This document shows, in pieces, positions 4,036-55,870 of a stretch of DNA of 64,000 bases. Each line of letters begins with the position of its first letter. Within the stretch, counting starts at the first letter, position 1. The notes under the pieces are model-generated. The model made no database searches. It was given only the letters and a program-made list of their open reading frames with translations, and had not been told where the DNA came from. Where the stretch lies: positions 1 to 64,000 of the IMG/VR virus record IMGVR_UViG_3300046323_000587. The stretch is one strand, 5' to 3'. Position numbers and translations under genes: made by a program.

Positions 4036-4281
4036 ATGCTACCACAAGATATTGAAAAGAATTACGATAAAGATAGATTAAAATTAAGAGAAGAAAATAC
4101 TAGAAAGAAGTTAAAGGCTTTATCTATGGGTTATGAATATGTATTAAATGAGGGTTGGTATAATAATAAAGGAGAATTTCTTTGTAGAAATGGTAGTAAA
4201 TTAAACTTTAATATAACAGAATCAAATTATGCAAATTGGAGAAAACATAAAGAAGATAATATATTTAAAAGTCAAAACTAG
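4036..4281 (+). CDS. hypothetical protein
   Basis: 81-aa ORF overlapping the start of the next gene. Confidence 0.55.
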   Translation: MLPQDIEKNYDKDRLKLREENTRKKLKALSMGYEYVLNEGWYNNKGEFLCRNGSKLNFNITESNYANWRKHKEDNIFKSQN

Positions 4282-5131
4282 TTTATTAATAATCTTTTTA
4301 TTGGTAAGCTTTTATGGTATTTATAGAGTTGTAGTGAATATTTTGCAACCAAATCAAACAGTAGTTAATTTCAATAATATATTAAATAAATTACAAAATA
4401 CTCAACAAATAACTGTTTATGAGAAAATGGTGTTTTGTGATTCAATACATAAAAATAATGCTTTATTAAAAAGTTATAAACAATATTGTGAGTCAGGAAG
4501 TGAATTTATACAATTTGATTCAGTTTATAAAACCATACACAATAATAATCAATGGACAGATAGTTTAACTGTCCAAAAAACTAGTTATCAATCAACAATT
4601 AATTTTAAACAGGCTTATCAAAAAGAAAATATTTATTTAAATGGTTTATTAGTTTGGAAAGAATTTAAAATTTTAAGCGAAAATTACATAATTAATTCTT
4701 TTCAAGATTCTTTTAAAACTATTATTAATAAAAAAGATTTATTTCATATTTATTTTGGTCATCTATATTTTAATGATGCCTCTGAAACTTTCATCAAAAA
4801 ACTAAACTCGACTCAATTTATTGAAACTGATTTTAATTATGAGTTAAAAAACATTCTCTTTGATTTAGATATGTTATTTAAAAGAATTAACAATCAAAAT
4901 TTATTGTATTTTACAAGTAATGTAGGAAAAGATTCAACTAATTTTAGACTATATTTTAAAATAGATTTAAAACACTATTTATTATTCTTTGATTACAAAT
5001 CTATTATAAAACAACTTCAAATTAAATCATTTCTTGAAATAAAACAAAGTAAAATAAATACATTTATACATCAGAATAATGTTGATAGCTGTTTATTAAA
5101 ACACAATGTAAAATTATACTATAAAAAATAA
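4229..5131 (+). CDS. TM-anchored HIxxxH protein 1 (putative BECR/EndoU-like RNase toxin)
   Basis: Basic N-terminus, TM SLLIIFLLVSFYGIYRVVV, CX16C, DLFHIYFGH, late QIKSFLEI; function is inference. Confidence 0.55.
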   Translation: MQIGENIKKIIYLKVKTSLLIIFLLVSFYGIYRVVVNILQPNQTVVNFNNILNKLQNTQQITVYEKMVFCDSIHKNNALLKSYKQYCESGSEFIQFDSVYKTIHNNNQWTDSLTVQKTSYQSTINFKQAYQKENIYLNGLLVWKEFKILSENYIINSFQDSFKTIINKKDLFHIYFGHLYFNDASETFIKKLNSTQFIETDFNYELKNILFDLDMLFKRINNQNLLYFTSNVGKDSTNFRLYFKIDLKHYLLFFDYKSIIKQLQIKSFLEIKQSKINTFIHQNNVDSCLLKHNVKLYYKK

Positions 5132-5143
5132 ACCAAATTTGAA

Positions 5144-5845
5144 ATGTTTTCTACAAAAATATATACAGAAATATCTTTGATTTCAAGTCAAACAGCAAAA
5201 TATTTGTATTCTAGTTATAATATTCCAGTAACTTATGAAGAAGATTGTCCGTATATTGTAATACTAGAAATAGATATAAAAACAAAAGAGTACAGATTTT
5301 TATCAAAAAAAGAAAATAATGGTAATTATTTAAGATACACCTTAAAACAAATTAAATTTCTATTAGAAACACCTAATATAGAAGTATGTTCTTCAATAGA
5401 AGCTCTAGCAGATATTTTCTTTAAATACGATAATAAATTATATAGTTTTAACTCTTATGACATACAAAGACAAAGAATGTCTAATAAATTATTACATTAT
5501 AGAGATAGAGCTAAACCTTTATGGAATTTATTTAATGAAGGCGAATATTATTTATTTGATTTCGTATTATCACCAGAAACTATCGAGAATCTTGTACTTG
5601 ATAACAGAACTAAATTAATCAATGAAAAGTATTCTTTATCTCAGCAATATAAATCAATAGCTATTCCTGATTACATTGTTTCTCAAAAGCAATATGATTT
5701 TGTAATTGATTTATACAATAAAAACGGCTGGATTATTCAATATATTGATATAATGAATAATAGTGAAAATTGTTATATATCAAGTAATTTTTTAGATAAG
5801 TATTGTTTAGTTAAAGGTACAGACAAAATAATTAAAATTAAATAA
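5144..5845 (+). CDS. partner of toxin-like gene 1 (putative immunity)
   Basis: 233 aa, no signal or TM, starts 12 nt after gene 1. Confidence 0.45.
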   Translation: MFSTKIYTEISLISSQTAKYLYSSYNIPVTYEEDCPYIVILEIDIKTKEYRFLSKKENNGNYLRYTLKQIKFLLETPNIEVCSSIEALADIFFKYDNKLYSFNSYDIQRQRMSNKLLHYRDRAKPLWNLFNEGEYYLFDFVLSPETIENLVLDNRTKLINEKYSLSQQYKSIAIPDYIVSQKQYDFVIDLYNKNGWIIQYIDIMNNSENCYISSNFLDKYCLVKGTDKIIKIK

Positions 5846-5871
5846 ACTTAGTATAACTATAAAAAAAATTT

Positions 5872-6825
5872 ATGTTAGATACAATAAAAAAAGCAAATTC
5901 AAATAAAGTAAAGTTAGGTTTCGATAATAAATTATATAAAGTAAGTTCTCTATTAATAGTTATAACTATTTTATTAGCTTTAATATATTCTTATTTTATT
6001 ATTAAATCTGAAATTCCAGTTACACCCAAATACGAAGAGCAATTACTTCACAAACTTCAAAGTAAAGACGGAAATCTATCAAAAGAAGAAGTTCAAGTGT
6101 TATTAAATACTTATGGAAAATACAAGATACTTCAGATGCTTTTCACACAAGAGTTTATCGAAGAAAGTTATACTTATGAAGAATTTTTATTAGATTACAA
6201 AGAATTAAAAGATAAACCTATATTTAAAATAGCTTTGTTGTATGAAAAAATTAATTTAAATAAAAGTAGTAATAAAATTATTTTAAATCAATTATACAAT
6301 GAAAATAAAAGAAGAATAAATAAATCAAAACAAAAAAAGGAGTTAATAATTATAACTACTTGTTTAAAATATGTTTTATACAAAGAAATAATAAAAAATT
6401 TTAGGTCTGAACACATTTTTTACATAAAAGATATAAAAATAACTTTAAGTTTATTAAACTTCTTTCATATTTGGATTGGTCACGGTATAGATTATAAAAA
6501 AGATTTTAATATAATTATAGAAGAGCAAACTCTTACAAAAGTACCTGAGTTTAATTACTCTTCTCACAATTTAATATTAGATTTAGATTTTTTATTTTCT
6601 AAAGTAAATAGTTTAGATTTAGATATAAATAACGATTTAAATAAACATAATAAACTATATTTTAAATTTTGTAATTTAGATTATGTTATATCTTTACATA
6701 AAAATAAAGAAAAAGATTTTAATATTACTACAATGTATATAGAAAGCAATGATTATTTAATCAAGAATTTTAATGCATTTATCAGTGTAAACCATCAAAC
6801 AATATATTTTTATGGAAAAAAATAA
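5872..6825 (+). CDS. TM-anchored HIxxxH protein 2 (putative RNase toxin, clade A)
   Basis: TM LLIVITILLALIYSYFII, NFFHIWIGH, NITTMYIE; close paralog of 8631-9614. Confidence 0.6.
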   Translation: MLDTIKKANSNKVKLGFDNKLYKVSSLLIVITILLALIYSYFIIKSEIPVTPKYEEQLLHKLQSKDGNLSKEEVQVLLNTYGKYKILQMLFTQEFIEESYTYEEFLLDYKELKDKPIFKIALLYEKINLNKSSNKIILNQLYNENKRRINKSKQKKELIIITTCLKYVLYKEIIKNFRSEHIFYIKDIKITLSLLNFFHIWIGHGIDYKKDFNIIIEEQTLTKVPEFNYSSHNLILDLDFLFSKVNSLDLDINNDLNKHNKLYFKFCNLDYVISLHKNKEKDFNITTMYIESNDYLIKNFNAFISVNHQTIYFYGKK

Positions 6826-7231
6826 TAATTTTTATTTCTATTTTAAAGATTTTTTAAATAGAAATAAAATTTTAAATCTTTTAAAAGAAGAGAAAGTATT
6901 ATTAGAAGAAGATGAAGTTATCACAAATTGTAAAATAGAGAGTCTTGTTTTTTCTTTTAACACCATTAAAGAAAATAATACAAAATTTGGTAATGATATA
7001 CTAATAGAACAAGAAAATACAATAATAAATGTTGTAAAAGTATTAAAAAATATAAAAAATTTTACATATTTTAAGGATAGAATTGACATTTATCAACTAC
7101 CCAATGTGTTAAAATTTATTTCCAAATTTATCCTTACTAGCAAAGAATTAATAATAATAAAAAATCTTGATACTGAAGAAGAGTATTTAATAACTGAAAC
7201 AACAATTATAAATTGCCATAAATATTTATAA
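6812..7231 (+). CDS. family A partner (putative immunity)
   Basis: Overlaps the toxin stop; C-terminal SKELIIIKNLDTEEEYLITETTIINC. Confidence 0.55.
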   Translation: MEKNNNFYFYFKDFLNRNKILNLLKEEKVLLEEDEVITNCKIESLVFSFNTIKENNTKFGNDILIEQENTIINVVKVLKNIKNFTYFKDRIDIYQLPNVLKFISKFILTSKELIIIKNLDTEEEYLITETTIINCHKYL

Positions 7232-7232
7232 A

Positions 7233-7670
7233 ATGATAGACTTAAAAAATAGTTCTTTTTATTTTTCTTTTGTAGATATTATAGATAGAAATAGAATATT
7301 AAACATAGTAAAAAAGAATAATATTTTTATTTACTCTGACTACTTAATATTAAATCGCAACATACCTTATTTAATTTATTCAAATAATTATATTTCAGAT
7401 AAAACTACATTTTACGATAAAAAATATTATGTATTTGAAAATGAGTCTACTTTTTTTAATACAATTAAAATAATAAAAACATTAAAATCTTTCACTTATT
7501 TACAAATACCTGACAATTTTTTTGAATGTTTTGATTTAAGTAGACTTTTAACTAAATTTGTTTTTAATAGCAAAGAATTGATAGTAATTAAAGATCTTGA
7601 CACGAATGCAGAATATATTGTAACAGAAAAAACAACTATAAATTGTACTAGTTTTTTTATAAAATGTTAG
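7233..7670 (+). CDS. family A partner (putative immunity)
   Basis: SKELIVIKDLDTNAEYIVTEKTTINC. Confidence 0.55.
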   Translation: MIDLKNSSFYFSFVDIIDRNRILNIVKKNNIFIYSDYLILNRNIPYLIYSNNYISDKTTFYDKKYYVFENESTFFNTIKIIKTLKSFTYLQIPDNFFECFDLSRLLTKFVFNSKELIVIKDLDTNAEYIVTEKTTINCTSFFIKC

Positions 7671-8119
7671 ACTTAAAAAATAACTATTTTTATTTTTGTA
7701 TAAGAGATATAGAAAAAAATCAAGAACTTATAGAAAAAATAATGCTTAGACATAATTACACAGAACATTGGTTTTCTATTAATACAGAAGTATTTAAGAT
7801 AAATAACAAAACTAAAACAATCTCTGGTAATGGAAGTTCAACTTACTGTAATTATATATTAATAGAAAATCCTGCTGTATTAGACAATATATTAGATGTT
7901 TTAAATAAAGTAAATACTTTTGAATATCTTAAAGAAACTTATCCAAGAGAAGAACGTTATATACATAATAGTTTAACTACAGTTAATATGTTAGCTAGGT
8001 TTTTAATTAATTCAAAAGAATTAATCATTATTAAAGACCTAAAAACATTGAATGAATACATAGTAACAGAAAATAGAGTAATAGATTGCAATAAATATTT
8101 AACCACATTATCTAATTAA
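7664..8119 (+). CDS. family A partner (putative immunity)
   Basis: SKELIIIKDLKTLNEYIVTENRVIDC. Confidence 0.55.
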   Translation: MLDLKNNYFYFCIRDIEKNQELIEKIMLRHNYTEHWFSINTEVFKINNKTKTISGNGSSTYCNYILIENPAVLDNILDVLNKVNTFEYLKETYPREERYIHNSLTTVNMLARFLINSKELIIIKDLKTLNEYIVTENRVIDCNKYLTTLSN

Positions 8120-8124
8120 ATAAA

Positions 8125-8607
8125 ATGATAGACTATCCCACAAACAATAAATTAAATTTTGTATTAAGCACTTCTATTGATTTAGAAGAATTAGTTAATT
8201 TATTTGAATTAAATAAAGTAAAAATTCATTATAGACTTAAACACAACACTATATACAGATTAGTATTACTGAAAGAAGAAATTATATTAGATGTACCTAA
8301 CAGTAATATTTATTATACTATTACCAATATTAACACTTTTGTAAATTACTTTTCTGCAATAAAAGATACTGATACAACAACACCTATGTATATTATGAAT
8401 GGTGATGACGGTACAGGTGATTCAGAAATAGGTAAATTTCATTTTGATAAAGAACCAGAAGAAGAGGATTTTCCACAAACAAAAGCTTATATTAGTAAGT
8501 TTCTTTATGATGCAGTAGAGTTAATTATATTATCTGATGAACGGTTTAATTGGACATTGATAACAGAAAAAAGCATTGAAAATATAACTCTTACAGATGT
8601 AGAATAA
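8125..8607 (+). CDS. divergent family A partner (putative immunity)
   Basis: SKFLYDAVELIILSDERFNWTLITEKSI aligns with the family A C-terminus. Confidence 0.5.
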   Translation: MIDYPTNNKLNFVLSTSIDLEELVNLFELNKVKIHYRLKHNTIYRLVLLKEEIILDVPNSNIYYTITNINTFVNYFSAIKDTDTTTPMYIMNGDDGTGDSEIGKFHFDKEPEEEDFPQTKAYISKFLYDAVELIILSDERFNWTLITEKSIENITLTDVE

Positions 8608-8630
8608 TTAAACATTTAAATTTTACAATT

Positions 8631-9614
8631 ATGATAAAAACAAAAGAAAAAGTTGATAAGGTTGATAAGAAGAACAATTATAACCTAGGTTTTGATAACA
8701 AATTCTATAAAGCAAGTTCATTAGTAATAATTATTTCGATTTTATTAACAATAGTTTTTTCTATTTACCCAATAAAATCTGAAATTCCAATTACGCCTAG
8801 TTATGAAGAACAATTATTACAAAAATTACAGACTAAAGAGGGAAATTTATCAAAAGAAGAAGTTGAAATATTGTTGAATATTTATGGAAAATATAAAATT
8901 CTTCAAATGTTGTTTACTCAAGAGTTTATTGAGGAAGAATATACTTATGAAGAATTTTTATTAGATTACAAAGAGTTGAAAGATAAATTAATTTTTAAAA
9001 TTGCTTTGTTATATGATGAAAAAAATTTAATTGGCAAAAATGCTGTAACTAAAAACAAAGTTATTTTAAATATATTGGGTTCAGATAATAAAGCTAAATT
9101 AGAATATACAAAAGCAATTTATAAAGATTCTTTAAAAGCTGTATTAAATTGTTTAAAATATGTTGTTTATGGAGAAATTAGAAAAAAGTATGAACCTTTA
9201 TATATTTTTAAACTAAAAGATATAGAAATAAAATTTTATATAACCTATTTATACCATATTTGGACAGGACATTGTATAGACTATCAAAAAGATTTTAATA
9301 TTATGTTGAATAAAACAAATATTGTAGATACATTTTCAGAATTTAGAAGAATTAATATATTTTTAGATATTGGTTTTTACGTTCAAAAATTAAATGACTT
9401 GGATTTAGATTATAAGAAGATTTTAACTAACAATGAAAATTTATATTTTAAATTAGGAGAAGTTATATATTGTTTAAGAATTATTGTAAAAAACAATGAA
9501 TATATAATAGAAACTTATTATCCAAAGAATGAAATAGATCTTTCAAGTAAAAAAACAATTATTGAAATTAAACTTAACTATAAAACATATTTTTATTATG
9601 AACACAAAAAATAA
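8631..9614 (+). CDS. TM-anchored HIxxxH protein 3 (putative RNase toxin, clade A)
   Basis: TM SLVIIISILLTIVFSIYP, YLYHIWTGH, IIETYYPK (EndoU-like terminal strand). Confidence 0.6.
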   Translation: MIKTKEKVDKVDKKNNYNLGFDNKFYKASSLVIIISILLTIVFSIYPIKSEIPITPSYEEQLLQKLQTKEGNLSKEEVEILLNIYGKYKILQMLFTQEFIEEEYTYEEFLLDYKELKDKLIFKIALLYDEKNLIGKNAVTKNKVILNILGSDNKAKLEYTKAIYKDSLKAVLNCLKYVVYGEIRKKYEPLYIFKLKDIEIKFYITYLYHIWTGHCIDYQKDFNIMLNKTNIVDTFSEFRRINIFLDIGFYVQKLNDLDLDYKKILTNNENLYFKLGEVIYCLRIIVKNNEYIIETYYPKNEIDLSSKKTIIEIKLNYKTYFYYEHKK

Positions 9615-10044
9615 ATTTTATTTTTACATATACGATACAAAAGAAGACAAAACTCAAGTTGAAAATCTTTGTGTAAAGTATAATTTTATTTGTGACAATA
9701 CTCATCCTTGGTTTTCTGGAGATACAGAATTATATATTATTGATACAATAGAAAAAAATGTTTGGGGAGATAACATTTGTAGTTATGCTAATCGTATTAG
9801 TATAGAAGATATCAATTTTTTAGAAAACATTTTTATTGTATTGAGTAGTTTAACTCAGTTTGAATACTCTAAGAACACTTTTCACAGAGACGAAGATTAT
9901 CGTTACATAAATGGAAAAAAACTTTTAACTACTAGAGAAATGTTAGCTCAGTTTTTATTTAAAAGTAAAGAATTAGTTATTATAAAAGATTTAATAACAA
10001 AAAAAGAGTATTTAATAACAGAGAATAAAATAATTAAATGCTAA
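9598..10044 (+). CDS. family A partner (putative immunity)
   Basis: ATG at 9598 overlaps the toxin end (track start 9562 is TTG); SKELVIIKDLITKKEYLITENKIIKC. Confidence 0.55.
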   Translation: MNTKNKFYFYIYDTKEDKTQVENLCVKYNFICDNTHPWFSGDTELYIIDTIEKNVWGDNICSYANRISIEDINFLENIFIVLSSLTQFEYSKNTFHRDEDYRYINGKKLLTTREMLAQFLFKSKELVIIKDLITKKEYLITENKIIKC

Positions 10045-10048
10045 ATTA

Positions 10049-10495
10049 ATGAAAGATTACAATATACTTTCTTTTATAATATCCTATGAAATAAATAGAG
10101 AAAAATTACTAGCTTTATTAAAACAATCTAATGCAAATCTTCAAAATTTTTTTAACTTCGATGAACAGGAGCCTGGATATGTAATATACAATAATAAAAC
10201 TAATACTTTTTATAGTGATTTTAGTTATATTGTTACAAATACAATTAAAATAGAAAATGAAAATCTATTATTAAATGTATTGAAAGTATTAAAAACTCTA
10301 AATACATTTAATTATTTTATAGAAACAACTAGAATTTTAGAATTGCCTGATAAAAGTAAATTTATTTCTAGTCTTTTATTTAAAAGTAAACATTTAATCA
10401 TTATTAAAGATTTAGAAAATAATAAAGAATATTTAATAACAGAAGACAATATTGTTGATTGTAATGATTTTTTGTCTAAAAAAGTTTTAAACTAA
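10049..10495 (+). CDS. family A partner (putative immunity)
   Basis: SKHLIIIKDLENNKEYLITEDNIVDC. Confidence 0.55.
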   Translation: MKDYNILSFIISYEINREKLLALLKQSNANLQNFFNFDEQEPGYVIYNNKTNTFYSDFSYIVTNTIKIENENLLLNVLKVLKTLNTFNYFIETTRILELPDKSKFISSLLFKSKHLIIIKDLENNKEYLITEDNIVDCNDFLSKKVLN

Positions 10496-10497
10496 TT

Positions 10498-10956
10498 ATG
10501 GGTACAAAAAATAAATTTTATTTTTATATAGATTATAGAAAAGAAACAGAGGTTACTGAAATATGTAAAAAATATAAATTTTCTTATGACTATGATCCTC
10601 TTTGGTTTTCTTGTAATACAGAAATATATACTATTGATACAGAAAAAAAATACGTTTGGGGAGATACTGTTTATAATTACAATACTTCCATTGCGATAGA
10701 TAATCTAAATCTACTAGAAAATGTTTTTATTGTATTAAGCAATTTAATTGAATTTGAATACTCTAAAACTACTTTTCAAAGAGATGAAAAAGATTATAGT
10801 TATTTTAAAAATTCAACAACAAAAGAATTGATACCAAGAATCTTATTTAAAGATAAATATTTAATAATAATCAAGAATTTAATTACATTAGAGGAGTATC
10901 TAATTACTGAAAACAGAATTATAAATTGTATCGAATATTTAACTCAAAATAAATAA
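10498..10956 (+). CDS. family A partner (putative immunity)
   Basis: DKYLIIIKNLITLEEYLITENRIINC; close paralog of 9598-10044. Confidence 0.55.
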   Translation: MGTKNKFYFYIDYRKETEVTEICKKYKFSYDYDPLWFSCNTEIYTIDTEKKYVWGDTVYNYNTSIAIDNLNLLENVFIVLSNLIEFEYSKTTFQRDEKDYSYFKNSTTKELIPRILFKDKYLIIIKNLITLEEYLITENRIINCIEYLTQNK

Positions 10957-10958
10957 AA

Positions 10959-16467: not shown

Positions 16468-16502
16468 AAGCCTTTCTAATGTATTTTAGAAAGGTTTTTT
16501 TA
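16468..16502 (+). terminator. intrinsic terminator
   Basis: AAGCCTTTCTAA..TTAGAAAGGTTT plus T run, directly before toxin-like gene 4. Confidence 0.75.
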
Positions 16503-16528: not shown

Positions 16529-17551
16529 ATGACTGTACTAATATTAAAAATTAATAAAAAAAAAGTTATTAGAAAACAACCAAAGAATAAATTAACTATT
16601 AAATTATTATTTATTGTTAGTACAATCCTTTCAATAGGAATTTATTTTGTTTATAAAGAATATAAAGAAAGTTATTACAATGATTTAGAAATAAGACTAA
16701 TAAATAAACTTCCATTATCTCAAAAAGAAAAAAACGATTTATGTAAATATTTTTTAGGTACTGATAAAGAAAAATATAAAAAATATTGTTTAAATCAAGA
16801 TACTTCTATTAATAATTTATTAGAGAAATACCTATACAATAGAACAAATATTTCTTATACAGATAGTATAAAAATAGATTCAATTTATCTAGATTTCTTT
16901 AAAAAATTAGACAAAGCTAGATCAATAGAAAATAAAACTGGTAAAAATTTACTAACAGAATCTAAAAAAGTGGTAAATAGTTACAAAGAATATATAAGAA
17001 GAATTAAACATAAAATAAAATACAATGTATCTACAAAAGATATTTATTTATTGACTTTATATGTATATACTCAAATAACAAATGAGAAAATTTTAAATAA
17101 TTATGAGTTTTTTGTTTCTTATAAAAAACATAAGATTATAGTAAATAAATTTTCTTTATTACATATAATAGTTAGACATTATTTTATAAGCAATTATTAC
17201 ATAAATAACAATTCTACTTTATATAAATATACTACTTATAATGAATTAATCATAGAACTACAAAAATTTTTAAAAGCTATTTCTTTTTCTGAACAAATTG
17301 ATAAAACTGTATTATTTGAAAGTAGTCAATCTAAAGATATACAGAATTATAGTGTTTATATGTTTAATGATTCTGTAAAATTAGATTTACATCTAATTAA
17401 ACTTAAAAATACTTTTTTTGTTGAAACATTTTTTGTTCACGATAGTAGTGCAGTATCTAATTTATCTGACAATAGAAAAATAAAAACAACCAATTGTAAT
17501 TATTATAATCTAATTAATAACGTAAAAATATTTTATAAAGATGATAAATAA
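16529..17551 (+). CDS. TM-anchored HIxxxH protein 4 (putative RNase toxin, clade B)
   Basis: K-rich N-terminus, TM LLFIVSTILSIGIYFVY, CX14C, SLLHIIVRH, LYKYTTYNELI, FVETFFVH. Confidence 0.6.
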   Translation: MTVLILKINKKKVIRKQPKNKLTIKLLFIVSTILSIGIYFVYKEYKESYYNDLEIRLINKLPLSQKEKNDLCKYFLGTDKEKYKKYCLNQDTSINNLLEKYLYNRTNISYTDSIKIDSIYLDFFKKLDKARSIENKTGKNLLTESKKVVNSYKEYIRRIKHKIKYNVSTKDIYLLTLYVYTQITNEKILNNYEFFVSYKKHKIIVNKFSLLHIIVRHYFISNYYINNNSTLYKYTTYNELIIELQKFLKAISFSEQIDKTVLFESSQSKDIQNYSVYMFNDSVKLDLHLIKLKNTFFVETFFVHDSSAVSNLSDNRKIKTTNCNYYNLINNVKIFYKDDK

Positions 17552-17903
17552 TAACATAAAAGTAATTTGTAAACATTCACAAGATTTTGAATATTTAATT
17601 TTAGAGAATAAATTACCAATAGCAACTAAATATGTAGAAGAATCTAAAATTTTAAAAGAATTGTTAAATTATAAAGACTTTCTACCTTCTAGTTTTTATC
17701 TAAATTTACTTGATTTATTTATTGAACCTTGTGAAACAATAGAAAATTGTGAAGTAAATCCATATTATTTTTATTATTTTGATGAAGAAAGTTTGTACTC
17801 AATTAATGAATTTAAAAATTTATTGTTTAATAAAGAGTATATAACTAAAATAATTGTTAATTATAATTCAATAGAGATAGTATACAATATTTATAAAAAT
17901 TGA
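17541..17903 (+). CDS. family B partner (putative immunity)
   Basis: IKVIC..LPI..YLNLLDL..ITKIIVNYNSIEIVY; overlaps the toxin stop. Confidence 0.55.
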   Translation: MINNNIKVICKHSQDFEYLILENKLPIATKYVEESKILKELLNYKDFLPSSFYLNLLDLFIEPCETIENCEVNPYYFYYFDEESLYSINEFKNLLFNKEYITKIIVNYNSIEIVYNIYKN

Positions 17904-17907
17904 CACA

Positions 17908-18666
17908 ATGAAAAATACAAAGATTAAAGTTTTTTGTTTTAATAAATCTGAAACAAACTATGCAGAATTTTCTAATTTAATTCCAATATATTTAAGTGAA
18001 TATGTAGAAGAGTTTAAAAATATTTTTGGATTTGAAAACATTACTTCAAATAAAGTATTGCTAAATATAGACTTGTTATCAATAAAGAATATTTCTTACG
18101 AAAACTATACTGAGATGTTTTGTTTTAATCCAAATAATTTTTTACAAATAAGATTATTAAGAGAACTGTTTGATTTTAGTAGACATATTTCTTCAATACA
18201 AATAAAGAAAAATTCAATAGCTATTACTAAAACCAGTAAAGAAAACTATATCTACAAAAAAAAAGAATATATTCCTTTAAATTTAAATGAAAATAAAGAT
18301 TGTAGAGTAAGATATTGGTTTAGTAAAGGTTATGTTGATGGAAGCTTTTACTATGAACAAGTAAATAAAGTAAATATTAATTTAGGAATATATTTAAAAG
18401 AATTTGAAGAACTGTTTGGATTTAAAGACATATCAACTTCGAATATAATTTTAGATATTGAAAATAATACAATAGAGCCTAATACTTTTATTGAATATCT
18501 TAAAAAAGACGGTACACCAGAAATAGAATTTAATCCTCACATTATTTTTATTGTAGGTATTTTGAAAGAGTTGATTTCCAGTGATAAAATAAAAGCAGTT
18601 GATATCTATTCAGATAAAATAAAAATCGAAAAACATTCTAATACAAATATTTGTAATTATTATTAA
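17908..18666 (+). CDS. family B partner, two tandem domains
   Basis: 252 aa with two copies (IPIYLSEYVEEFKNIFGF / LGIYLKEFEELFGF). Confidence 0.55.
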   Translation: MKNTKIKVFCFNKSETNYAEFSNLIPIYLSEYVEEFKNIFGFENITSNKVLLNIDLLSIKNISYENYTEMFCFNPNNFLQIRLLRELFDFSRHISSIQIKKNSIAITKTSKENYIYKKKEYIPLNLNENKDCRVRYWFSKGYVDGSFYYEQVNKVNINLGIYLKEFEELFGFKDISTSNIILDIENNTIEPNTFIEYLKKDGTPEIEFNPHIIFIVGILKELISSDKIKAVDIYSDKIKIEKHSNTNICNYY

Positions 18667-18672
18667 TGCTTT

Positions 18673-19011
18673 ATGAAAATAATTTGTAAACAGTTTATTG
18701 ACAATTCTTATAAAGCATATATAAATAAAATACCAATTTTAGCAAGACATAAAAAAGATTGTTATAATATATTAGATAACGATTTTTTATTAGAAAAAGA
18801 ATATATAACTAAAACTTTTTATTACTTAGATTTAACAGATTTATCTATACAAATTGCTTCTGAAATTTCAATTGAATATAATTATTATTTATTAGATCAA
18901 GAAAATCAACAATCGGTCGATTTTTTAAGTAATATTTTAATTGATTTATCTAGTATTTCTCAAATTATTATAGAAGAAAATAATATACAAATAACTTATA
19001 AATATAAATAA
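18673..19011 (+). CDS. family B partner (putative immunity)
   Basis: MKIIC..IPI..YYLDLTDL..ISQIIIEENNIQITYKY. Confidence 0.55.
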   Translation: MKIICKQFIDNSYKAYINKIPILARHKKDCYNILDNDFLLEKEYITKTFYYLDLTDLSIQIASEISIEYNYYLLDQENQQSVDFLSNILIDLSSISQIIIEENNIQITYKYK

Positions 19012-19012
19012 T

Positions 19013-19369
19013 ATGGATCAAGATAGAATAGAAGTAATTTGTTGGAATAACGAATTGAATACTTCTGAAAAATTTTATAATGAGATTCCTATCTATATTG
19101 GTGAATATAAAAAAGAGTTTAAAGATTTATTTGCTGTTTCTAGTATAATAGAAGATTATGTTTTTATAGATTTAGTAAATTTAAAAGTAAGTAATCTTAA
19201 AATATCAGAAGAGAATAAAAAATATTGGAAACAATGGATTCAATTTCATCCTGATAACAGTTTCTTAATTAAGAAACTAAAAGAGATTCTTAAATACTCT
19301 GAAAATGTTGATAAAATAGAAATAAAGCAAAATGAATTAATTATTCAGTATAAAATAAATAATAATTAA
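19013..19369 (+). CDS. family B partner (putative immunity)
   Basis: IEVIC..IPIYIGEY..FIDLVNL..VDKIEIKQNELIIQY. Confidence 0.55.
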   Translation: MDQDRIEVICWNNELNTSEKFYNEIPIYIGEYKKEFKDLFAVSSIIEDYVFIDLVNLKVSNLKISEENKKYWKQWIQFHPDNSFLIKKLKEILKYSENVDKIEIKQNELIIQYKINNN

Positions 19370-19371
19370 TT

Positions 19372-19746
19372 ATGATACAAGTAATATGCGAACACAGAAA
19401 TAATGAAGAACCTTTGATTTTAATTGATAAGTTACCTATATCAGGACCATTTCAAGAAGACATAAATAAATTAACTTCTTTTCTTAATATTTCTAAGATA
19501 AACCACACAGACTTTTATTTAAATTTAATTGACTTTACTGCAATAGAGACAGAGGAATTCTTTTTTGATGATAATAATTTATATTGCTATTTTTATTTAG
19601 ATACAGATTATCAAGATTCATTAAATCAATTGAAACATATTGTAAATAATGTATCTAATATAAAAAGTATAACAATAAAGTTTGAGTCTATTTTAATAGA
19701 ATATTATAGTCATACTAATTTTGTAGACGTACATAAATTAATGTAA
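19372..19746 (+). CDS. family B partner (putative immunity)
   Basis: IQVIC..LPI..YLNLIDF..IKSITIKFESILIEY. Confidence 0.55.
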   Translation: MIQVICEHRNNEEPLILIDKLPISGPFQEDINKLTSFLNISKINHTDFYLNLIDFTAIETEEFFFDDNNLYCYFYLDTDYQDSLNQLKHIVNNVSNIKSITIKFESILIEYYSHTNFVDVHKLM

Positions 19747-35215: not shown

Positions 35216-35238
35216 CTTTTAATTTATAAACAAATATT

Positions 35239-36740: not shown

Positions 36741-37736
36741 GTGTTTAGATTAAATCAACTACCAAAAGAAGTAAACACTAAAAAATCAAATTTAGCTACT
36801 AAAATACTAATTCTAGTTTCTATTATAGTATCTATTTATTATTGGGAAGATCTATTAAAGTTGCTCACTGATTTGTTTAGTAGTAACAATATTGAAAAAC
36901 AATACATTAAAAAACTAGAAAACAATGAACGACTAAATGATTCAGAAAGACAATATATTTGTAACTATTTCTTAAATATTGGAGATACAAGTAGTTACAA
37001 TAAATACTGTTTAAATGTTGTAGATGATAAATTTCAAGTTTTGTTTGAAAGATATGTTCAAGATGAAAATTCTATTTCACAAGAAGAATTTGAATATATA
37101 TTTAACACAGCAGAAACCTTTAAATACTTATGTGAACAAGTAAGTGGAGACACTATAAAAGGCGATAAATTACAGAGAGAATGTCAAAAAACAATGAAAA
37201 GTATAACAAAAAATAAAGATGTAAAACATTTAAAAAAACATCTTTTAAAGTGGTATTATATGTTTTATATTTATAACGAGATTGTAAAAGAAGCTAATTT
37301 AAATGGTCTCAATCTAAAATATAAGGTGTATAAAACAGATTCTACTTATATTTATGTTAAACTATTAAATACTTCTTTATTACATATTAAATATAAACAC
37401 TATGAACTAAAAAGTTTTACAGAATCTGAAATTTCTTTATTTAAAAATTATACTTATTACGATGAATTAATAAGAGATTTAAATGAAATCTTTAAATATA
37501 TTACACTAAATAGATTGAAATTAAATAAAATTAATTTTAATACACTTGATCTAGACCTTTATTTAATTTATTTAATTATTAATGATTTGCCGATGACTCT
37601 ATACATTGATAAAGCAACTAATGTTATTACTACTTTTTATATAGAAGAAAAAGATTTTGATAATAAACTGTTGAAAATACAAAATAGTGACACTTTAAAA
37701 TTAAATAAGTATATTAAAATTCTAATTAAAAAATGA
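36741..37736 (+). CDS. TM-anchored HIxxxH protein 7 (putative RNase toxin, clade B)
   Basis: GTG start MFRLNQLP, TM ILILVSIIVSIYYW, CX15C, SLLHIKYKH, YTYYDELIRDL, VITTFYIE. Confidence 0.6.
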   Translation: MFRLNQLPKEVNTKKSNLATKILILVSIIVSIYYWEDLLKLLTDLFSSNNIEKQYIKKLENNERLNDSERQYICNYFLNIGDTSSYNKYCLNVVDDKFQVLFERYVQDENSISQEEFEYIFNTAETFKYLCEQVSGDTIKGDKLQRECQKTMKSITKNKDVKHLKKHLLKWYYMFYIYNEIVKEANLNGLNLKYKVYKTDSTYIYVKLLNTSLLHIKYKHYELKSFTESEISLFKNYTYYDELIRDLNEIFKYITLNRLKLNKINFNTLDLDLYLIYLIINDLPMTLYIDKATNVITTFYIEEKDFDNKLLKIQNSDTLKLNKYIKILIKK

Positions 37737-38080
37737 GACATATTCCAGTAAAATATTATTTTGGTAATACACCAGACACAGAATATAAAGTATACGATGA
37801 AATTATATTGTATGATACACTTTGTTTACATACTTTTAATGGTGAAGAATGGGTAGAATATGTTTTAAATTTAAATACATTTAAATTAATATGCACACCT
37901 TTTTTTCTATCTGTTTATCTATTTAATAATCACCGTACTTACGAATCAGTAATTTTTTATATTAAACAACACATTTCTAAAATTAGTTCTATGGAAATTA
38001 ATCGAGAAAGTGACTTAATTATTAATTTTAATGATGGTAGAATTAAAACATTCGAAGCTTATTACCAATATTATATATAA
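37733..38080 (+). CDS. family B-like partner (putative immunity)
   Basis: ATGA overlap with the toxin stop; YVLNLNTF..ISKISSMEI. Confidence 0.55.
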   Translation: MRHIPVKYYFGNTPDTEYKVYDEIILYDTLCLHTFNGEEWVEYVLNLNTFKLICTPFFLSVYLFNNHRTYESVIFYIKQHISKISSMEINRESDLIINFNDGRIKTFEAYYQYYI

Positions 38081-38091
38081 TTAAATATTCT

Positions 38092-38451
38092 ATGAGAAAT
38101 ATACCTGTTACTTATCCTACATCATTAGCAGAAACTTTTATTATTAAATATCAAACAAGACTTCCTGTTAATATTACAACATTAACTTTATCAAATACTT
38201 TATTTTACACATATAAACATAAAGATTACATATTAAATTTAAATACCTTGGAATCAATACAAATTTCTTTTTATTTAGATATACAATACTACGAAAATGA
38301 GATATATTGTAAATATAGTTTAGATTGTATAAAAAAAGAAATACACAAGATAAAATCAATTAAAGTAATTACACATTTACAAGATTGCAATAAAGAAATA
38401 ATAAAATTATTAGTAACGTATAAAGATAATTCAACAAAAATTTATGTTTAG
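38092..38451 (+). CDS. family B-like partner (putative immunity)
   Basis: MRNIPV..YILNLNTL..IHKIKSIKV. Confidence 0.55.
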   Translation: MRNIPVTYPTSLAETFIIKYQTRLPVNITTLTLSNTLFYTYKHKDYILNLNTLESIQISFYLDIQYYENEIYCKYSLDCIKKEIHKIKSIKVITHLQDCNKEIIKLLVTYKDNSTKIYV

Positions 38452-38794
38452 AACTTGTTTACATGAAATACAATATAATTCAATATGGTGTTTACATCAC
38501 ACAGATTATAATAAATTAAATAGAATTTATGACGAAGAAAATGTATCATTAGGTAATACAATTTGTATGTATTTTCAAGGTCGTCAACAAATATTTGATA
38601 CAGAATTACTAGAAATTAAAGAAATCCCTTTTGATTTTGGTGTTTATTATTTTAATAATCTAGAAAAAGAAGAAGAAGTTGTAAATACTGTTTTAGAACA
38701 TTATTTAAATATTGATTCTGTTGAAATAACAAAAGAGTCTATGATTATTACATTAAAAGATAAAACAGCATTTACTTTTGAATCTAAATTTTAA
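38444..38794 (+). CDS. family B-like partner (putative immunity)
   Basis: IFDTELL..PFDFGVYYF..IDSVEITKESMIITL. Confidence 0.5.
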   Translation: MFRTCLHEIQYNSIWCLHHTDYNKLNRIYDEENVSLGNTICMYFQGRQQIFDTELLEIKEIPFDFGVYYFNNLEKEEEVVNTVLEHYLNIDSVEITKESMIITLKDKTAFTFESKF

Positions 38795-48321: not shown

Positions 48322-48745
48322 ATGTAAAATTTTAATCATTATTTACTATGAACATTGATATAAAACAAACTCTTATTCAAAAGAATGAAAAAATAATTAC
48401 TAAAATAGAATTATTAAAAGAAGAAATATATAATCTTAAACAACAATCACATTATTTATGGAAACACCTATTAAAAAAAAGTAGTTGATTTTACTAAAAC
48501 ATATCAAAATTATATTGGTAAATATTATGAATATGATGAAAGTAGAATTAAAATTATTAGAGTGTGTACTGAATTTGAATGTACTAGGATTCGTTGTATT
48601 AATGGAGTGTATTGTGTTCAATACAATATTGAAGGAATTGATCGGTATAAATATTTTAAAATCTACTATGAAAGTAACTTTTTAAATTTGATAAAAAATG
48701 GAGTAGAGTTAAGTGAAGAAGAGTTTTATAAATTTAACGAAAAAT

Positions 48746-53376: not shown

Positions 53377-54186
53377 ATGATAAAAGAAATCAATAAATTA
53401 AGTTTTAAATACTTCGATAAAGAAGAGTTATTAACTTTTAAAGAAATTATTAATAATACTAAGCTTGAAAAAATTAAATCAGGATTAGAAATAAAGAAAA
53501 GACTTTTAAAATATTTTGCTGAAGTAGATATATTGTATGAAGATGCTAGCCAACATTCTCTATACTATTAAAATAAGCAGAAGAAATTATATTTTACTTT
53601 AAGTATTTTCTAAAGAATACATTTCTTTTTCTAGTGTATATAAAGATAAAGATGAAATAGTTAGTGCTTTTATTGGTGTTATAATTTCTTATGTAGATAT
53701 TAGTACAAGTGAACTTGAAAGTGAATTAGACAATTGTTTATACTCATTAATTGATATTATTGAAACACACTATTTAAAAAAAAATCAAATTATTTTAGAT
53801 TTTGTTTATGAATATTACTATAAGTTACTTAAAAAAAATAAAAATTTTAATTTAGCTGAATATAGAATAAACTCTACTAAACCTGAAAACTATAGTATAT
53901 TTTTTAAAAGTTTTATTATTCGTTCATATTATATTTATGATACTGATGAATATTTATTACTTAAATATAATTCTTTTATTGTAACTAATTTAAGTAAAAT
54001 ATTAAATTTTAGTATTACTAAAAAGCATCTTTTATTAGATTGTCGTAAATTAAATGATAATATATTAAGTATATACGAATCGGATAGCGATAATAATATA
54101 ATGAAACCAGAACGTTATTATATTGTTCCTACACCTGATTTAATTAAAGAATATGATTTAAATGATTTAATTATTAAATTAAAATA
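53377..54186 (+). pseudogene. decayed gene, paralog of 51430
   Basis: MIKEINKLSFKY..EELLTFK..YFAEVDILY, then stops and frameshifts in coding-like sequence. Confidence 0.5.
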
Positions 54187-54416
54187 ATTATGGAAATACT
54201 AGCTAAATTTAGAATGGGAATAGATTCAAGACCTGATTAGTTTTGTGATAAAGCTAGTAGAAATGAAATAACACCTCATTATGTCAATGAAAAGGAACAA
54301 CATCAAAAAAATACTAATCCTTTTGAATTTAAAGAAACTTATGTTAAAATTAGAGAAGTAATAATAAATTGTGGAGAATGGGTAGGTTTAACAGAAGCTA
54401 ATAAAATTATTAAATT

Positions 54417-54659
54417 ATGAAAATAAACTATAAATTTAATAAAAGTATTGAAAGTAGAGATTGTGTTGTAGAAAGTGTAGAGTTAGAAATTCTAGTGTAT
54501 ACACTATATAAAAAATTAACTTTACAAACATTTACAGAAGCATTAAACAATGCTAAGGAATCAAAAGATAATTTTTTAATTGGTGGTAATAAAGGAGAAG
54601 GAATTTGTAAACAGTTGGAATCTTTATATAAACAAGAAACTAAGCAATTTACATCTTAA
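54417..54659 (+). CDS. hypothetical protein
   Basis: 80-aa ORF. Confidence 0.55.
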   Translation: MKINYKFNKSIESRDCVVESVELEILVYTLYKKLTLQTFTEALNNAKESKDNFLIGGNKGEGICKQLESLYKQETKQFTS

Positions 54660-54859
54660 CAAGACCTAAAATACTACATCAACACAATACAAGAACCAAT
54701 AGAGTTTATAGCTGAATCTGATATAGATCAAGTGTTAATGAAAGAATGGGTTGGTGAATGGGAATATAAAACTATACCCTTATCTACTAAACATTTGAGT
54801 ATAGTTAAAACAGGTTCACCAAAACTTAATTCAAATTGGACACTTAAAATTAAATAATT

Positions 54860-55870
54860 ATGGAAATTAAAGAATCGAGCAATAAAACTAAAATAGGTTT
54901 TAATAAATTAACTATTAAGTATTCAAAATATGTGATTATAGTAGCTATACTTTTATCTAGTATAGTCGCTATTTTTTACAATCAAGAAAATAATGAAATT
55001 ACTTATATTAAAAGTTTAGAATTAAAATTAGATAGGAAAGAAGATTTAACTAATGAAGAACATCATTATTTATGTAGACATTACTTAAATTATAACTTAG
55101 ATAAATATTATCTACACTGTCTAAATCAAACAGAACAAGAATCTAAGTTTGTTTCATTATTTGAAATGTTTCTAAATGATTCTAATAGTATTTCAGATGT
55201 AGAAAAGAAATTTTTAGATAGTTTAACTCAAGATTTTATTGTTAAGTGTACAAAAGAAACTTCTTATAATAAGAAAAATTTATATGTAGAAGCAACAAAA
55301 ATATATAAAAGTTTTACATCTGTTGAACAAGATAAATTAAAGAAAAATGTAAATTATGTACCAAAAACCAAACTAAATATCTATAAAATACTTTATTATG
55401 TGTTCATTAAATTATCAAGAGAAAAAAGCTTATTGACATTAAATTATGTGTATAATATAAATGATATTGTAATTACAATAGACACAACAAGTTTATATCA
55501 TATAATTTCTAGACATTATCAATATAAGTATTTAAATGATAACAAATCAAGTTTATATAAATATGAAAACTACGATGAATTGATTTTAGATTTAAATAGA
55601 ATTTTGTTTGCTTTACAATTAAATAAAGAAATATTTAAAGATGTATTTTATCTTAATGGAAACAATGGAACAATATATTTGTTTACACAAGAGTATCAAT
55701 TAGATATACATTTTAATAGAATTAATAATTTTCACTATAAAGTAATTACTTTTTATATCTATGATCCAAGTGAAGTAATAAGAAAAGATCATAGACCTAA
55801 TAGAATTTTAAATAAAAAAGAAATAAAATTATTTAACGATTGTAAAATATATAAAGTAAATGAAAATTAA
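54860..55870 (+). CDS. TM-anchored HIxxxH protein 8 (putative RNase toxin, clade B)
   Basis: TM YVIIVAILLSSIVAIFY, CX14C, SLYHIISRH, LYKYENYDELILDL, KVITFYIY. Confidence 0.6.
   Translation: MEIKESSNKTKIGFNKLTIKYSKYVIIVAILLSSIVAIFYNQENNEITYIKSLELKLDRKEDLTNEEHHYLCRHYLNYNLDKYYLHCLNQTEQESKFVSLFEMFLNDSNSISDVEKKFLDSLTQDFIVKCTKETSYNKKNLYVEATKIYKSFTSVEQDKLKKNVNYVPKTKLNIYKILYYVFIKLSREKSLLTLNYVYNINDIVITIDTTSLYHIISRHYQYKYLNDNKSSLYKYENYDELILDLNRILFALQLNKEIFKDVFYLNGNNGTIYLFTQEYQLDIHFNRINNFHYKVITFYIYDPSEVIRKDHRPNRILNKKEIKLFNDCKIYKVNEN

What the first reader, a model, noticed from the sequence alone, without database searches (positions are those of the whole stretch)
4229..55870. Topology paradox: nuclease-like domain predicted outside the cytoplasm, partners inside
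Seen: Lys-rich N-termini precede the single TM, and six of the eight proteins carry a CX14-16C pair just after it (absent in clade A). No partner has a signal peptide or TM. Established: the positive-inside rule predicts N-in/C-out, and conserved Cys pairs in exported domains often form disulfides. Inference: the effector is exported or displayed (periplasm, membrane vesicle or virion) and acts in another cell's cytoplasm, where partners protect. Alternatively it is a membrane-parked latent effector released on superinfection.
Basis: inference. Interest (0 to 1): 0.62.

Follow-up and report, generated by a model that had tools for sequence, protein, structure and literature searches.

The report
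Membrane-anchored toxin-like cassettes in jumbo phage
A 226-kb crAss-like phage carries eight old, diverged copies of a membrane-anchored protein whose end resembles a bacterial RNA-cutting toxin, each followed by small acidic cytoplasmic proteins that look like antidotes; toxin outside and antidote inside is the usual layout of exported bacterial toxins, but it has not been described in a phage in this form.

Summary
Exactly eight paralogs (300-340 aa) lie at 4229-55870 and nowhere else in the 226-kb genome. Each has a Lys/Arg-rich N-tail, one uncharged hydrophobic stretch of 14-21 residues, no conserved signal-peptidase site, and an invariant H-I-x3-H motif. Six of the eight carry an aligned CX14-16C pair. 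None of the 24 small downstream ORFs has a membrane-grade segment, and 19 of them are acidic.

The genome is a jumbo crAss-like phage, so the host is probably a diderm Bacteroidota.

The C-terminal domain is probably a BECR/PBECR-type RNase fold. It has the His and Thr/Ser motifs, and weak but consistent fold and HMM hits. Its TM-less bacterial homologs sit beside HTH genes and in defence islands. No single test of the fold reaches significance.

Partner families track the effector clades. In all 13 TM-bearing members, the downstream ORF overlaps the effector or starts within 30 nt of it.

The "paradox" is the normal logic of CDI and colicin-type nucleases. CdiA-CT also combines a helical, disulfide-stapled entry domain with a BECR RNase and a cytoplasmic immunity protein.

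Against the disulfide argument, one TM-less bacterial homolog keeps the Cys pair.

I rate this a new variant of a known kind, interest 0.6.

The parts
4229..5131 (+). Effector paralog 1 (300 aa; unplaced clade). TM 4280-4336; Cys pair 4436-4489; H-I-x3-H 4745-4762.
5144..5845 (+). Partner of paralog 1 (233 aa). Soluble, net charge 0. Starts 12 nt after the effector's stop.
5872..6825 (+). Effector paralog 2 (317 aa; clade A, no Cys pair). TM 5947-6003; H-I-x3-H 6466-6483.
6812..8607 (+). Partner array of paralog 2. Three pA-family ORFs (6812-7231, 7233-7670, 7664-8119) plus a distant, very acidic member (8125-8607). The first overlaps the effector by 14 nt.
8631..9614 (+). Effector paralog 3 (327 aa; clade A, no Cys pair). 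TM 8718-8774; H-I-x3-H 9255-9272.
9562..10956 (+). Partner array of paralog 3. Three pA-family ORFs (9562/9598-10044, 10049-10495, 10498-10956). The first overlaps the effector's end.
16468..16497 (+). Intrinsic-terminator-like hairpin with a T-run just upstream of effector 4. It is the only one on either strand in 4000-20500, so effectors and their partner arrays are probably co-transcribed.
16529..17551 (+). Effector paralog 4 (340 aa; clade B). TM 16595-16651; Cys pair 16742-16789; H-I-x3-H 17162-17179.
17541..19746 (+). Partner array of paralog 4. Five related ORFs (17541-17903, 17908-18666, 18673-19011, 19013-19369, 19372-19746) of families pB/pF. The first overlaps the effector by 11 nt.
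31433..32407 (+). Effector paralog 5 (324 aa; clade C). TM 31523-31579; Cys pair 31661-31714; H-I-x3-H 31991-32008.
32438..32929 (+). Partner of paralog 5 (163 aa; family pC; net charge -8).
33851..34807 (+). Effector paralog 6 (318 aa; clade C). TM 33926-33982; Cys pair 34064-34117; H-I-x3-H 34403-34420.
34817..35634 (+). Partner array of paralog 6. Two pC-family ORFs (34817-35215, 35239-35634). Two further unclassified small ORFs follow (35690-36106, 36185-36703).
36741..37736 (+). Effector paralog 7 (331 aa; clade B; GTG start). TM 36786-36842; Cys pair 36960-37010, plus a second CX16C at residues 131 and 148; H-I-x3-H 37383-37400.
37733..38794 (+). Partner array of paralog 7. Three pD-family ORFs (37733-38080, 38092-38451, 38444-38794). 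The first overlaps the effector by 4 nt.
54860..55870 (+). Effector paralog 8 (336 aa; clade B). TM 54920-54976; Cys pair 55073-55120; H-I-x3-H 55499-55516. The weak PBECR3 match lies at 55451-55627.
55860..56512 (+). Partner array of paralog 8. Two pE-family ORFs (55860-56168, 56174-56512). The first overlaps the effector by 11 nt.

Best explanation
These are phage-borne toxin-immunity-like cassettes. Each effector has three parts. The first is an uncleaved N-terminal signal anchor (shown: a hydrophobic segment with positive-inside asymmetry). The second is a helical region of about 150 residues, usually carrying a Cys pair on a helix-turn-helix (shown in the model). The third is a basic C-terminal alpha/beta domain of the BECR/PBECR kind (inferred). 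BECR folds are metal-independent RNases; PBECR-type families have a catalytic His on the helix and a Thr/Ser on the last core strand.

The Sec machinery would insert the effector N-in/C-out (inferred). That removes the toxic domain from the cytoplasm of the infected Bacteroidota cell. The small, mostly acidic, soluble proteins encoded immediately downstream are clade-specific and present in arrays of one to five. They would act as cytoplasmic neutralisers of the cognate toxin and related toxins (inferred).

The arrangement works like CdiA-CT/CdiI or colicin/immunity pairs. The nuclease is outside the producer's cytoplasm and its target is a cytoplasm. The antidote therefore sits in the cytoplasm of every cell that carries the phage. 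The weapon is most plausibly used in competition: against cells that lack the phage, or against cells or phages with other cassette sets.
For: - Eight full-length paralogs and no others.
- TM segment and charge asymmetry in 8 of 8 window proteins and 5 of 5 external phage-type homologs. No conserved SPase site.
- H-x4-H is invariant in 16 of 16 family members, and Thr/Ser in the 'I-x-T-F-Y' strand is present in 16 of 16. This matches the PBECR active-site description (PMC5512222) and the H-x4-H and T-T-M-Y motifs of PBECR3 proteins.
- PF18812 hits exactly the motif region (E 0.01).
- An Atlas cluster of PBECR2/3 proteins matches residues 195-325 (TM 0.58 by the target, rmsd 3.2).
- The best structural matches that cover the alpha/beta core are almost all BECR/RelE toxins (Z 2.7-4.4).
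- TM-less homologs sit in bacteria beside HTH_3 and Type III R-M and GmrSD genes, beside SIR2_2, or opposite an XRE-like gene.
- C-domains are net +4 to +9, while 19 of 24 partners are net acidic (-1 to -14).
- The downstream ORF overlaps or lies within 30 nt in 13 of 13 TM-bearing members.
- Partner families follow effector clades.
- The flank of the P0008/54860 positional pair is about 82% identical in nucleotides, while the effectors are about 25% identical in amino acids.
- CdiA-CT(EC3006) has the same build, with a hairpin disulfide needed for entry.
Against: - No test of the BECR fold is significant on its own. Foldseek found nothing at E <= 0.001. The VIA Z values are within the noise range. 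hhalign against PBECR3 gives P 0.09. Pfam, NCBIfam and PADLOC give no consistent hit.
- The models are of middling confidence (pLDDT 70-72).
- Effector-partner binding is untested; the complex job gave no verdict.
- Partners of homologs in other phages are not detectably related to those here.
- P0014 keeps the Cys pair without a TM.
- There is no outer-membrane crossing or receptor-binding module, and no obvious benefit to a lytic phage from killing neighbouring cells.
Confidence: 0.5

Rival explanations
1. Membrane-parked latent toxin acting on the producing cell. The effector is stored on the periplasmic face. A trigger such as superinfection, envelope damage or the approach of lysis releases it by proteolysis near the conserved juxtamembrane motif. 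Its helical domain then carries the nuclease back across the inner membrane, as CdiA-CT entry domains do. The partners set the threshold. The outcome would be superinfection exclusion, abortive-type killing, or timed host shut-off.
For: - Same anatomy as in the best explanation.
- A conserved juxtamembrane motif (T-P-x-Y-E-E-Q-L-L...) follows the TM directly.
- CdiA-CT needs cleavage and a disulfide-stabilised helical entry domain to pass from the periplasm to the cytosol.
- The genes lie in the early/replication-type block.
- This reading needs no outer-membrane crossing.
- The phage has an rIIA-like gene, so it takes part in exclusion-type conflicts.
Against: - No protease or trigger has been identified.
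- The arrays of several diverged partners per effector are easier to explain as protection against foreign toxins.
- The juxtamembrane motif is also present in TM-less P0014.
- There is no evidence that the helical region is an entry domain: fold searches of it return only generic helical matches.
Confidence: 0.2
2. The topology prediction is wrong. The hydrophobic helix tethers the protein to the cytoplasmic face (N-out/C-in, or a monotopic or oligomerisation helix). The pair is then an ordinary cytoplasmic toxin-antitoxin or host-takeover RNase with its inhibitor, localised at the membrane.
For: - Bacterial homologs lack the TM and must act in the cytoplasm.
- P0014 keeps the Cys pair in a cytoplasmic protein.
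- Partners are cytoplasmic.
- The overlap of the genes suggests co-translation at one site.
Against: - The N-tails of 15-30 residues carry net +3 to +8, and the C-flanks are neutral or acidic, in all 13 TM-bearing members. Moving such a tail across an energised membrane is strongly disfavoured under the positive-inside rule (established knowledge).
- The segments are of membrane-spanning length and hydrophobicity.
Confidence: 0.15
3. This is not a toxin system. The eight proteins would be periplasmic or envelope proteins of another function, such as blocking entry of competing phages, sensing or envelope remodelling. In that case the H-x4-H motif is not an RNase site, and the downstream small ORFs are unrelated early genes that duplicate in the same region.
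For: - All fold and profile evidence for BECR is below significance.
- The partners have no recognisable family.
- Phages commonly encode signal-anchored exclusion and lysis-control proteins (own knowledge: T4 Sp and RI).
Against: - Both motifs align collinearly with PBECR3.
- BECR toxins dominate the core-covering structural matches.
- TM-less homologs sit in TA-like and defence contexts.
- The partners are tightly and universally coupled, match the effector clades, and are mostly opposite in charge.
Confidence: 0.15

Closest known systems
CdiA-CT/CdiI of contact-dependent inhibition, e.g. CdiA-CT(EC3006), PDB 6VEK (PMC9424206)
   Same: - Two-part toxin: a helical region with an alpha-hairpin Cys pair, followed by a basic BECR-type RNase domain.
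- A small cytoplasmic immunity protein is encoded immediately downstream.
- The toxin passes through or resides in the periplasm while the antidote stays in the cytoplasm.
- 6VEK is the top second-look structural match of the C-domain model (Z 4.2, 109 residues aligned).
   Different: - No CdiA filament, VENN motif, CdiB transporter or receptor-binding part; there is only an N-terminal signal anchor.
- Encoded by a phage, in eight anciently diverged copies.
- The whole protein diverges, not only its tip.
- Similarity is weak, and the helical regions are not demonstrably related.
PBECR domains (Pfam PF18809, PF18810, PF18812-PF18814) of phage polyvalent and MuF proteins (Iyer et al. 2017, PMC5512222)
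   Same: - Phage-encoded, predicted metal-independent RNase of the BECR fold.
- A His on the helix and a Thr/Ser on a C-terminal strand.
- The H-x4-H and T-x-Y motifs align collinearly with PBECR3.
- Weak PF18812 hit on the motif and a match to an Atlas PBECR2/3 cluster.
   Different: - PBECR domains are solo, or fused to MuF, portal or polyvalent virion proteins, and are thought to be injected. They are not membrane-anchored.
- No immunity arrays were noted in the passages read.
- This family fails every Pfam cut-off.
RelE/HigB/ParE-type type II toxin-antitoxin modules
   Same: - A compact alpha/beta toxin core (HigB2, BrnT, RelE, ParE2 and YoeB are among the best matches, Z 2.7-3.9).
- An adjacent small neutralising-protein gene.
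- The TM-less homolog P0011 follows an HTH_3 gene in a defence island.
   Different: - The phage proteins are three times larger and carry a signal anchor and a helical domain.
- The partners have no DNA-binding domain and lie downstream in arrays.
Signal-anchored phage proteins of lysis control and exclusion (T4 RI antiholin, Sp; own knowledge)
   Same: An N-terminal membrane anchor with a periplasmic C-terminal domain, expressed by lytic phages and involved in responses to superinfection.
   Different: - Those proteins are small and have no nuclease-like domain.
- They have no cognate cytoplasmic partner arrays.
- No sequence or fold relation was found.

Membership tests
PBECR / BECR-fold RNase | Significant match to a family profile (Pfam gathering score) | tested here: not met
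   PF18812 scores 13.4 bits against a cut-off of 30 (E 0.01, at 55451-55627). PF18809, PF18810, PF18813 and PF18814 give no match. hmmscan of all 16 C-domains gives no PBECR hit. hhalign against 14 PBECR3 proteins gives P 0.09.
PBECR / BECR-fold RNase | Core of an N-terminal helix followed by a four- or five-stranded sheet | tested here: inconclusive
   The AF2 C-domain model (pLDDT 72) shows a beta-hairpin, the motif helix, two helices, three long strands and two short strands. Matches covering the core are CdiA-CT, HigB, BrnT, RelE and ParE, with Z 2.7-4.4. An Atlas PBECR2/3 cluster matches with TM 0.58 by the target. All of these are below a safe threshold.
PBECR / BECR-fold RNase | Active-site His in the helix and Thr/Ser on a C-terminal strand (PMC5512222) | tested here: met
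   H-I-x3-H is invariant, and Thr or Ser in 'I-x-[TS]-[FYM]-[YF]' is present in 16 of 16 members. The same spacing and order occur in PBECR3. This holds at motif level only.
PBECR / BECR-fold RNase | Endoribonuclease activity | not testable with these tools
   Needs purified protein and RNA substrates.
Polymorphic toxin-immunity systems (CDI, colicin-like) | C-terminal toxin domain followed directly by its immunity gene | tested here: met
   The downstream ORF overlaps the effector or lies within 30 nt in 8 of 8 window effectors and 5 of 5 external TM-bearing homologs. That these ORFs are immunity genes is inferred.
Polymorphic toxin-immunity systems (CDI, colicin-like) | Dedicated trafficking module (T5SS/T6SS/T7SS domain, receptor-binding or translocation domains) | tested here: not met
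   Only a signal anchor is present. Pfam finds no trafficking domain.
Polymorphic toxin-immunity systems (CDI, colicin-like) | Conserved N-terminal part with swapped C-terminal tips | tested here: not met
   The paralogs diverge along their whole length (16-33% identity). No orphan tips were found.
Polymorphic toxin-immunity systems (CDI, colicin-like) | Immunity protein binds and neutralises the toxin | tested here: inconclusive
   The complex prediction gave no verdict. The opposite net charges are only suggestive.
Type II (signal-anchor) membrane protein, N-in/C-out | One uncleaved hydrophobic segment of membrane-spanning length near the N-terminus | tested here: met
   Kyte-Doolittle 19-mer means are 1.6-2.6. 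Uncharged runs are 17-24 residues in most members and 14 in 36741. No conserved small-x-small site is present.
Type II (signal-anchor) membrane protein, N-in/C-out | Positive-inside charge asymmetry | tested here: met
   The N-minus-C flank charge difference is +2 to +8 in all eight, against a background mean of 0. The external homologs agree.
Type II (signal-anchor) membrane protein, N-in/C-out | Experimentally determined location of the C-terminal domain | not testable with these tools
   Needs reporter fusions or protease accessibility assays. No DeepTMHMM or SignalP was available here.
Type II toxin-antitoxin module | Cytoplasmic toxin paired with a DNA-binding antitoxin in a two-gene operon | tested here: not met
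   The phage partners have no HTH or other Pfam domain, and the effectors are predicted membrane proteins. Only the bacterial homolog P0011 has an HTH_3 neighbour.

The most novel reading that the evidence does not exclude
A lineage of jumbo crAss-like phages has turned a cytoplasmic BECR toxin of its Bacteroidota hosts into a periplasm-parked weapon by adding a signal anchor. The helical, Cys-stapled region would act like a CdiA-CT entry domain. After release it would drive the nuclease back across an inner membrane, either of the same cell on superinfection or of a neighbour after lysis. Only cells expressing the matching partner arrays would survive. That would be a phage-encoded kin-discrimination or superinfection-exclusion system built on self-delivering nucleases, kept as eight ancient cassette types.
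Probability: 0.2. Interest if true: 0.85.

Novelty: new variant of a known kind. Interest (0 to 1): 0.6.

Why it matters
If the reading holds, more than a tenth of a jumbo crAss-like genome (about 25 kb) is spent on eight signal-anchored nuclease-antidote cassettes. These cassettes predate the phage's split from its relatives.

This would extend the logic of bacterial polymorphic toxins (toxin exported, antidote cytoplasmic) to lytic phages of Bacteroidota. It points to phage-phage or infected-versus-uninfected cell warfare in the communities these phages inhabit.

It would also offer a minimal model for how a nuclease domain crosses an inner membrane, because there is no large delivery machine to account for. 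The family is almost unsampled: eight relatives among the representatives of about 15 billion proteins. Its fold, target and antidotes would all be new reagents.

Tried and rejected
- Effector annotation. Pfam, PHROGs, NCBIfam and PADLOC scans of the effectors gave nothing consistent. Isolated PADLOC hits (P0011 to CARF_PDDEXK, P0008 to PDC-S03, E about 1e-4) are not shared by other members and are taken as chance.
- Partner annotation. Pfam on ten partners gave nothing. Atlas look-alikes of two partners gave only sub-threshold leads. The Imm70 lead was tested with PF15601 on the genome and found nothing.
- Sequence searches. The word-index protein searches with A1 and A5 returned only the window's own proteins. 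A PDB sequence profile search returned only chance hits. tblastn of an effector against 50,697 phage records found no match.
- Whole-model fold searches were dominated by the long helices and gave no information.
- Complex prediction (effector C-domain with partner 55860-56168) gave no verdict, score 0.00. It counts neither for nor against binding.
- Partner homology across phages is not significant by HMM or hhalign (prob 4%), despite a shared C-terminal motif seen by eye.
- Considered and rejected:
  - cleaved Sec signal peptide: the hydrophobic regions are too long and there is no conserved cleavage site;
  - lipoprotein: only one paralog has a Cys in the segment;
  - another genetic code: table 11 gives uninterrupted ORFs of up to 3,833 aa, so none was used.

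Full report
**Source.** The window is the first 64 kb of a 226,480-bp virus record estimated at about 95% complete. GC content is 21-25%. Nearly all window genes are on the + strand. Outside the window the genome encodes a portal protein, a large terminase, a major head protein, an rIIA-like protein, a ribonucleotide reductase and a DNA polymerase, and ORFs of up to 3,833 aa under table 11. The terminase finds crAss-like phages of Bacteroides, Flavobacterium, Cellulophaga and Azobacteroides at about 30-34% identity. This is therefore a jumbo crAss-like phage, and its host is most probably a diderm Bacteroidota. The lack of Shine-Dalgarno-like sequences upstream of the genes fits that host (own knowledge of Bacteroidota translation initiation). 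No other genetic code was needed or used.

**The observation.** Eight paralogs of 300-340 aa are present at the stated places. Profile searches of all ORFs and of the six-frame translation of the whole genome find these eight only, with no fragments.
- Each has one hydrophobic segment (Kyte-Doolittle 19-mer mean 1.6-2.6) starting at residues 16-31 and no second one.
- N-tails are net +3 to +8, and the following 15 residues are net -2 to +1. The flank charge difference is +2 to +8 in all eight. Random 15-mers of this proteome, which is 10% Lys, have mean 0 and sd 1.9. The asymmetry is therefore more than the Lys-rich background gives.
- Uncharged runs are 14-24 residues, and no small-x-small site is conserved. 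This points to a signal anchor, not a cleaved signal peptide.
- A CX14-16C pair sits in aligned columns in six of the eight. It is absent from 5872 and 8631. It lies 30-45 residues past the segment.
- In the AF2 model of the 54860 protein, the two Cys fall on consecutive helices, 65-78 and 80-87. I could not measure their distance.
- The 24 downstream ORFs have no 19-mer above 1.48, and 19 of them are net acidic.

**Rarity and relatives.** An exhaustive HMMER search of 1.84 billion cluster representatives found only eight outside relatives.
- Five carry the same anchor. P0007 and P0008 lie on one 23-kb phage-like contig. P0009 lies on a 272-kb phage contig. P0010 and P0013 lie on short contigs.
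- Three lack the anchor and are bacterial. P0011 follows an HTH_3 gene in an island with Type III restriction-modification genes and two GmrSD genes. P0012 lies next to a SIR2_2 gene. P0014 lies in a Bacteroidetes MAG opposite an XRE-like gene, and no TM is encoded upstream in frame.
- A maximum-likelihood tree gives three well-supported clades: A (5872, 8631, P0009), B (16529, 36741, 54860, P0007, P0008) and C (31433, 33851, P0010). Terminal branches exceed one change per site.
- The cassette types are therefore older than this phage. The anchor goes with the phage context.

**What the C-terminal domain is.**
- Conserved motifs. Across all 16 proteins the invariant residues are H, I and H of H-I-x3-H. 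A Thr or Ser is also present throughout in an 'I-x-T-F-Y' strand. [quoted passage not shown]
- Comparison with PBECR3. I collected PBECR3 proteins from Flavobacterium and other Bacteroidota. They carry H-x4-H after a 'v-I-D' strand and end in 'T-T-M-Y'. The order and spacing are the same as here; paralog 5872 even reads I-T-T-M-Y.
- Profile results. hhalign aligns both motifs collinearly over 105 columns, but with P 0.09. PF18812 hits 55451-55627 at E 0.01, far under its cut-off. The other PBECR models give nothing.
- Structure results. The C-domain model (pLDDT 72) has no significant Foldseek match. The matches that cover its alpha/beta core are almost all BECR or RelE/ParE toxins: CdiA-CT of four systems, HigB1/2, BrnT, RelE, ParE2 and YoeB, at Z 2.7-4.4. 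An Atlas cluster annotated PBECR2/PBECR3 matches residues 195-325 (TM 0.58 by the target, rmsd 3.2).
- Weighing. Each item is weak. Together with the TA-like and defence contexts of the TM-less homologs and the basic charge of the domain (+4 to +9), I put the BECR-type RNase reading at about 0.7.

**The partners.**
- All-against-all BLAST and HMMs group the downstream ORFs into families: pA (six, plus one distant), pB/pF (five), pC (three), pD (three) and pE (two). There are faint links among pB, pD, pE and pF.
- pA follows clade A effectors only. The pB/pD/pE/pF group follows clade B, and pC follows clade C.
- The first partner overlaps the effector's end in five of the eight and starts within 30 nt in the rest. 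All five external anchored homologs have the same arrangement.
- The only terminator-like site in 4000-20500 lies just upstream of effector 16529, so effectors and arrays are probably co-transcribed.
- Upstream of 54860, the flank is about 82% identical in nucleotides to the flank of P0008 in the other phage. The two effectors share about 25% of residues, and the partners are not alignable. This contrast is typical of loci under conflict-driven divergence.
- Partners have no recognisable family. The single complex job gave no verdict.

**The 'paradox'.** Under the positive-inside rule (established knowledge), all 13 anchored members should insert N-in/C-out. A nuclease outside with an antidote inside is not paradoxical. 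It is how CDI toxins and nuclease colicins are organised, because their target is a cytoplasm.

The closest worked example is CdiA-CT(EC3006). [quoted passage not shown] One hairpin is stapled by a Cys55-Cys65 disulfide that is needed for passage from periplasm to cytosol. A BECR tRNase follows, and it is neutralised by cytoplasmic CdiI (PMC9424206). The phage proteins repeat this build behind a signal anchor.

What is unusual is the carrier (a lytic-type jumbo phage), the anchor, the absence of any outer-membrane delivery part, and the eight ancient copies.

**What remains open.** Nothing here shows where the toxin acts.
- The genes sit in the replication/early-type strand block, which argues against virion packaging.
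- Release by lysis or vesicles, and re-entry into the same cell after a trigger, both remain possible.
- P0014 keeps the Cys pair and the juxtamembrane motif without an anchor. The pair is therefore not proof of an oxidising compartment.

I therefore commit to the general mechanism at 0.5: an exported BECR-like toxin with clade-matched cytoplasmic neutralisers, used in competition. Three rivals stay in play: the membrane-parked self-acting version (0.2), wrong topology (0.15) and no toxin system at all (0.15).

Noticed in passing
window 54417-54842: The gene just upstream of effector 54860 has an in-frame TAA at 54657-54659. Its homolog in the related phage contig (L019:7510-7920, 136 aa) is intact, and similarity continues past the stop. 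It is either a nonsense-split gene or a pseudogene; TAA is also the main stop codon of this genome.
   Followed up: partly
window 48746-50086: An alanyl-tRNA-synthetase-like (tRNA-synt_2c) gene matches a 360-aa ORF of the 272-kb relative (L005:1193-2275) in two in-frame pieces, 48746-49267 and 49721-50086. About 450 nt lie between them, and residues 175-235 are missing. This could be an inserted element or intron, or decay; ORF calls in 47500-49400 are fragmentary.
   Followed up: partly
window 28691-29329; L003:10279-11157: The window encodes an RNA ligase (PF09414, E 3e-28). The related contig carrying P0007 and P0008 encodes a polynucleotide kinase-phosphatase. Both are RNA-repair enzymes, in phages that also carry many RNase-like toxins.
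   Followed up: no
window 10959-12329: An AAA ATPase (456 aa, PF00004 at residues 286-410) starts 3 nt after the last clade-A partner. It may belong to the same transcription unit.
   Followed up: no
window 42405-43361: An EcoRI-type adenine methyltransferase (PF13651, E 9e-84), presumably for protection against host restriction.
   Followed up: no
window 12654-13595 and 27910-28671; genome 217162-218001: A treble-clef zinc-finger protein (DUF4379) has a paralog near the other end of the genome, and there is a T5orf172 protein. Both are homing-endonuclease-like mobile genes.
   Followed up: no
window 52910-53374, 56841-57188, 57211-58083, 63266-64000: Further predicted membrane proteins unrelated to the eight effectors. 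One is a multi-span 290-aa protein lying about 0.7 kb downstream of the last cassette.
   Followed up: no
genome 116123-138593, minus strand (outside the window): Two adjacent ORFs of 3,655 and 3,833 aa, with others of 1,400-2,300 aa nearby. They were not analysed here.
   Followed up: no
L004:209-2999; L020:1713-10888: TM-less bacterial homologs of the effector domain lie next to a SIR2_2 gene (P0012), and behind an HTH_3 gene in an island with Type III R-M genes and two GmrSD genes (P0011). They may form an undescribed defence or TA module.
   Followed up: partly
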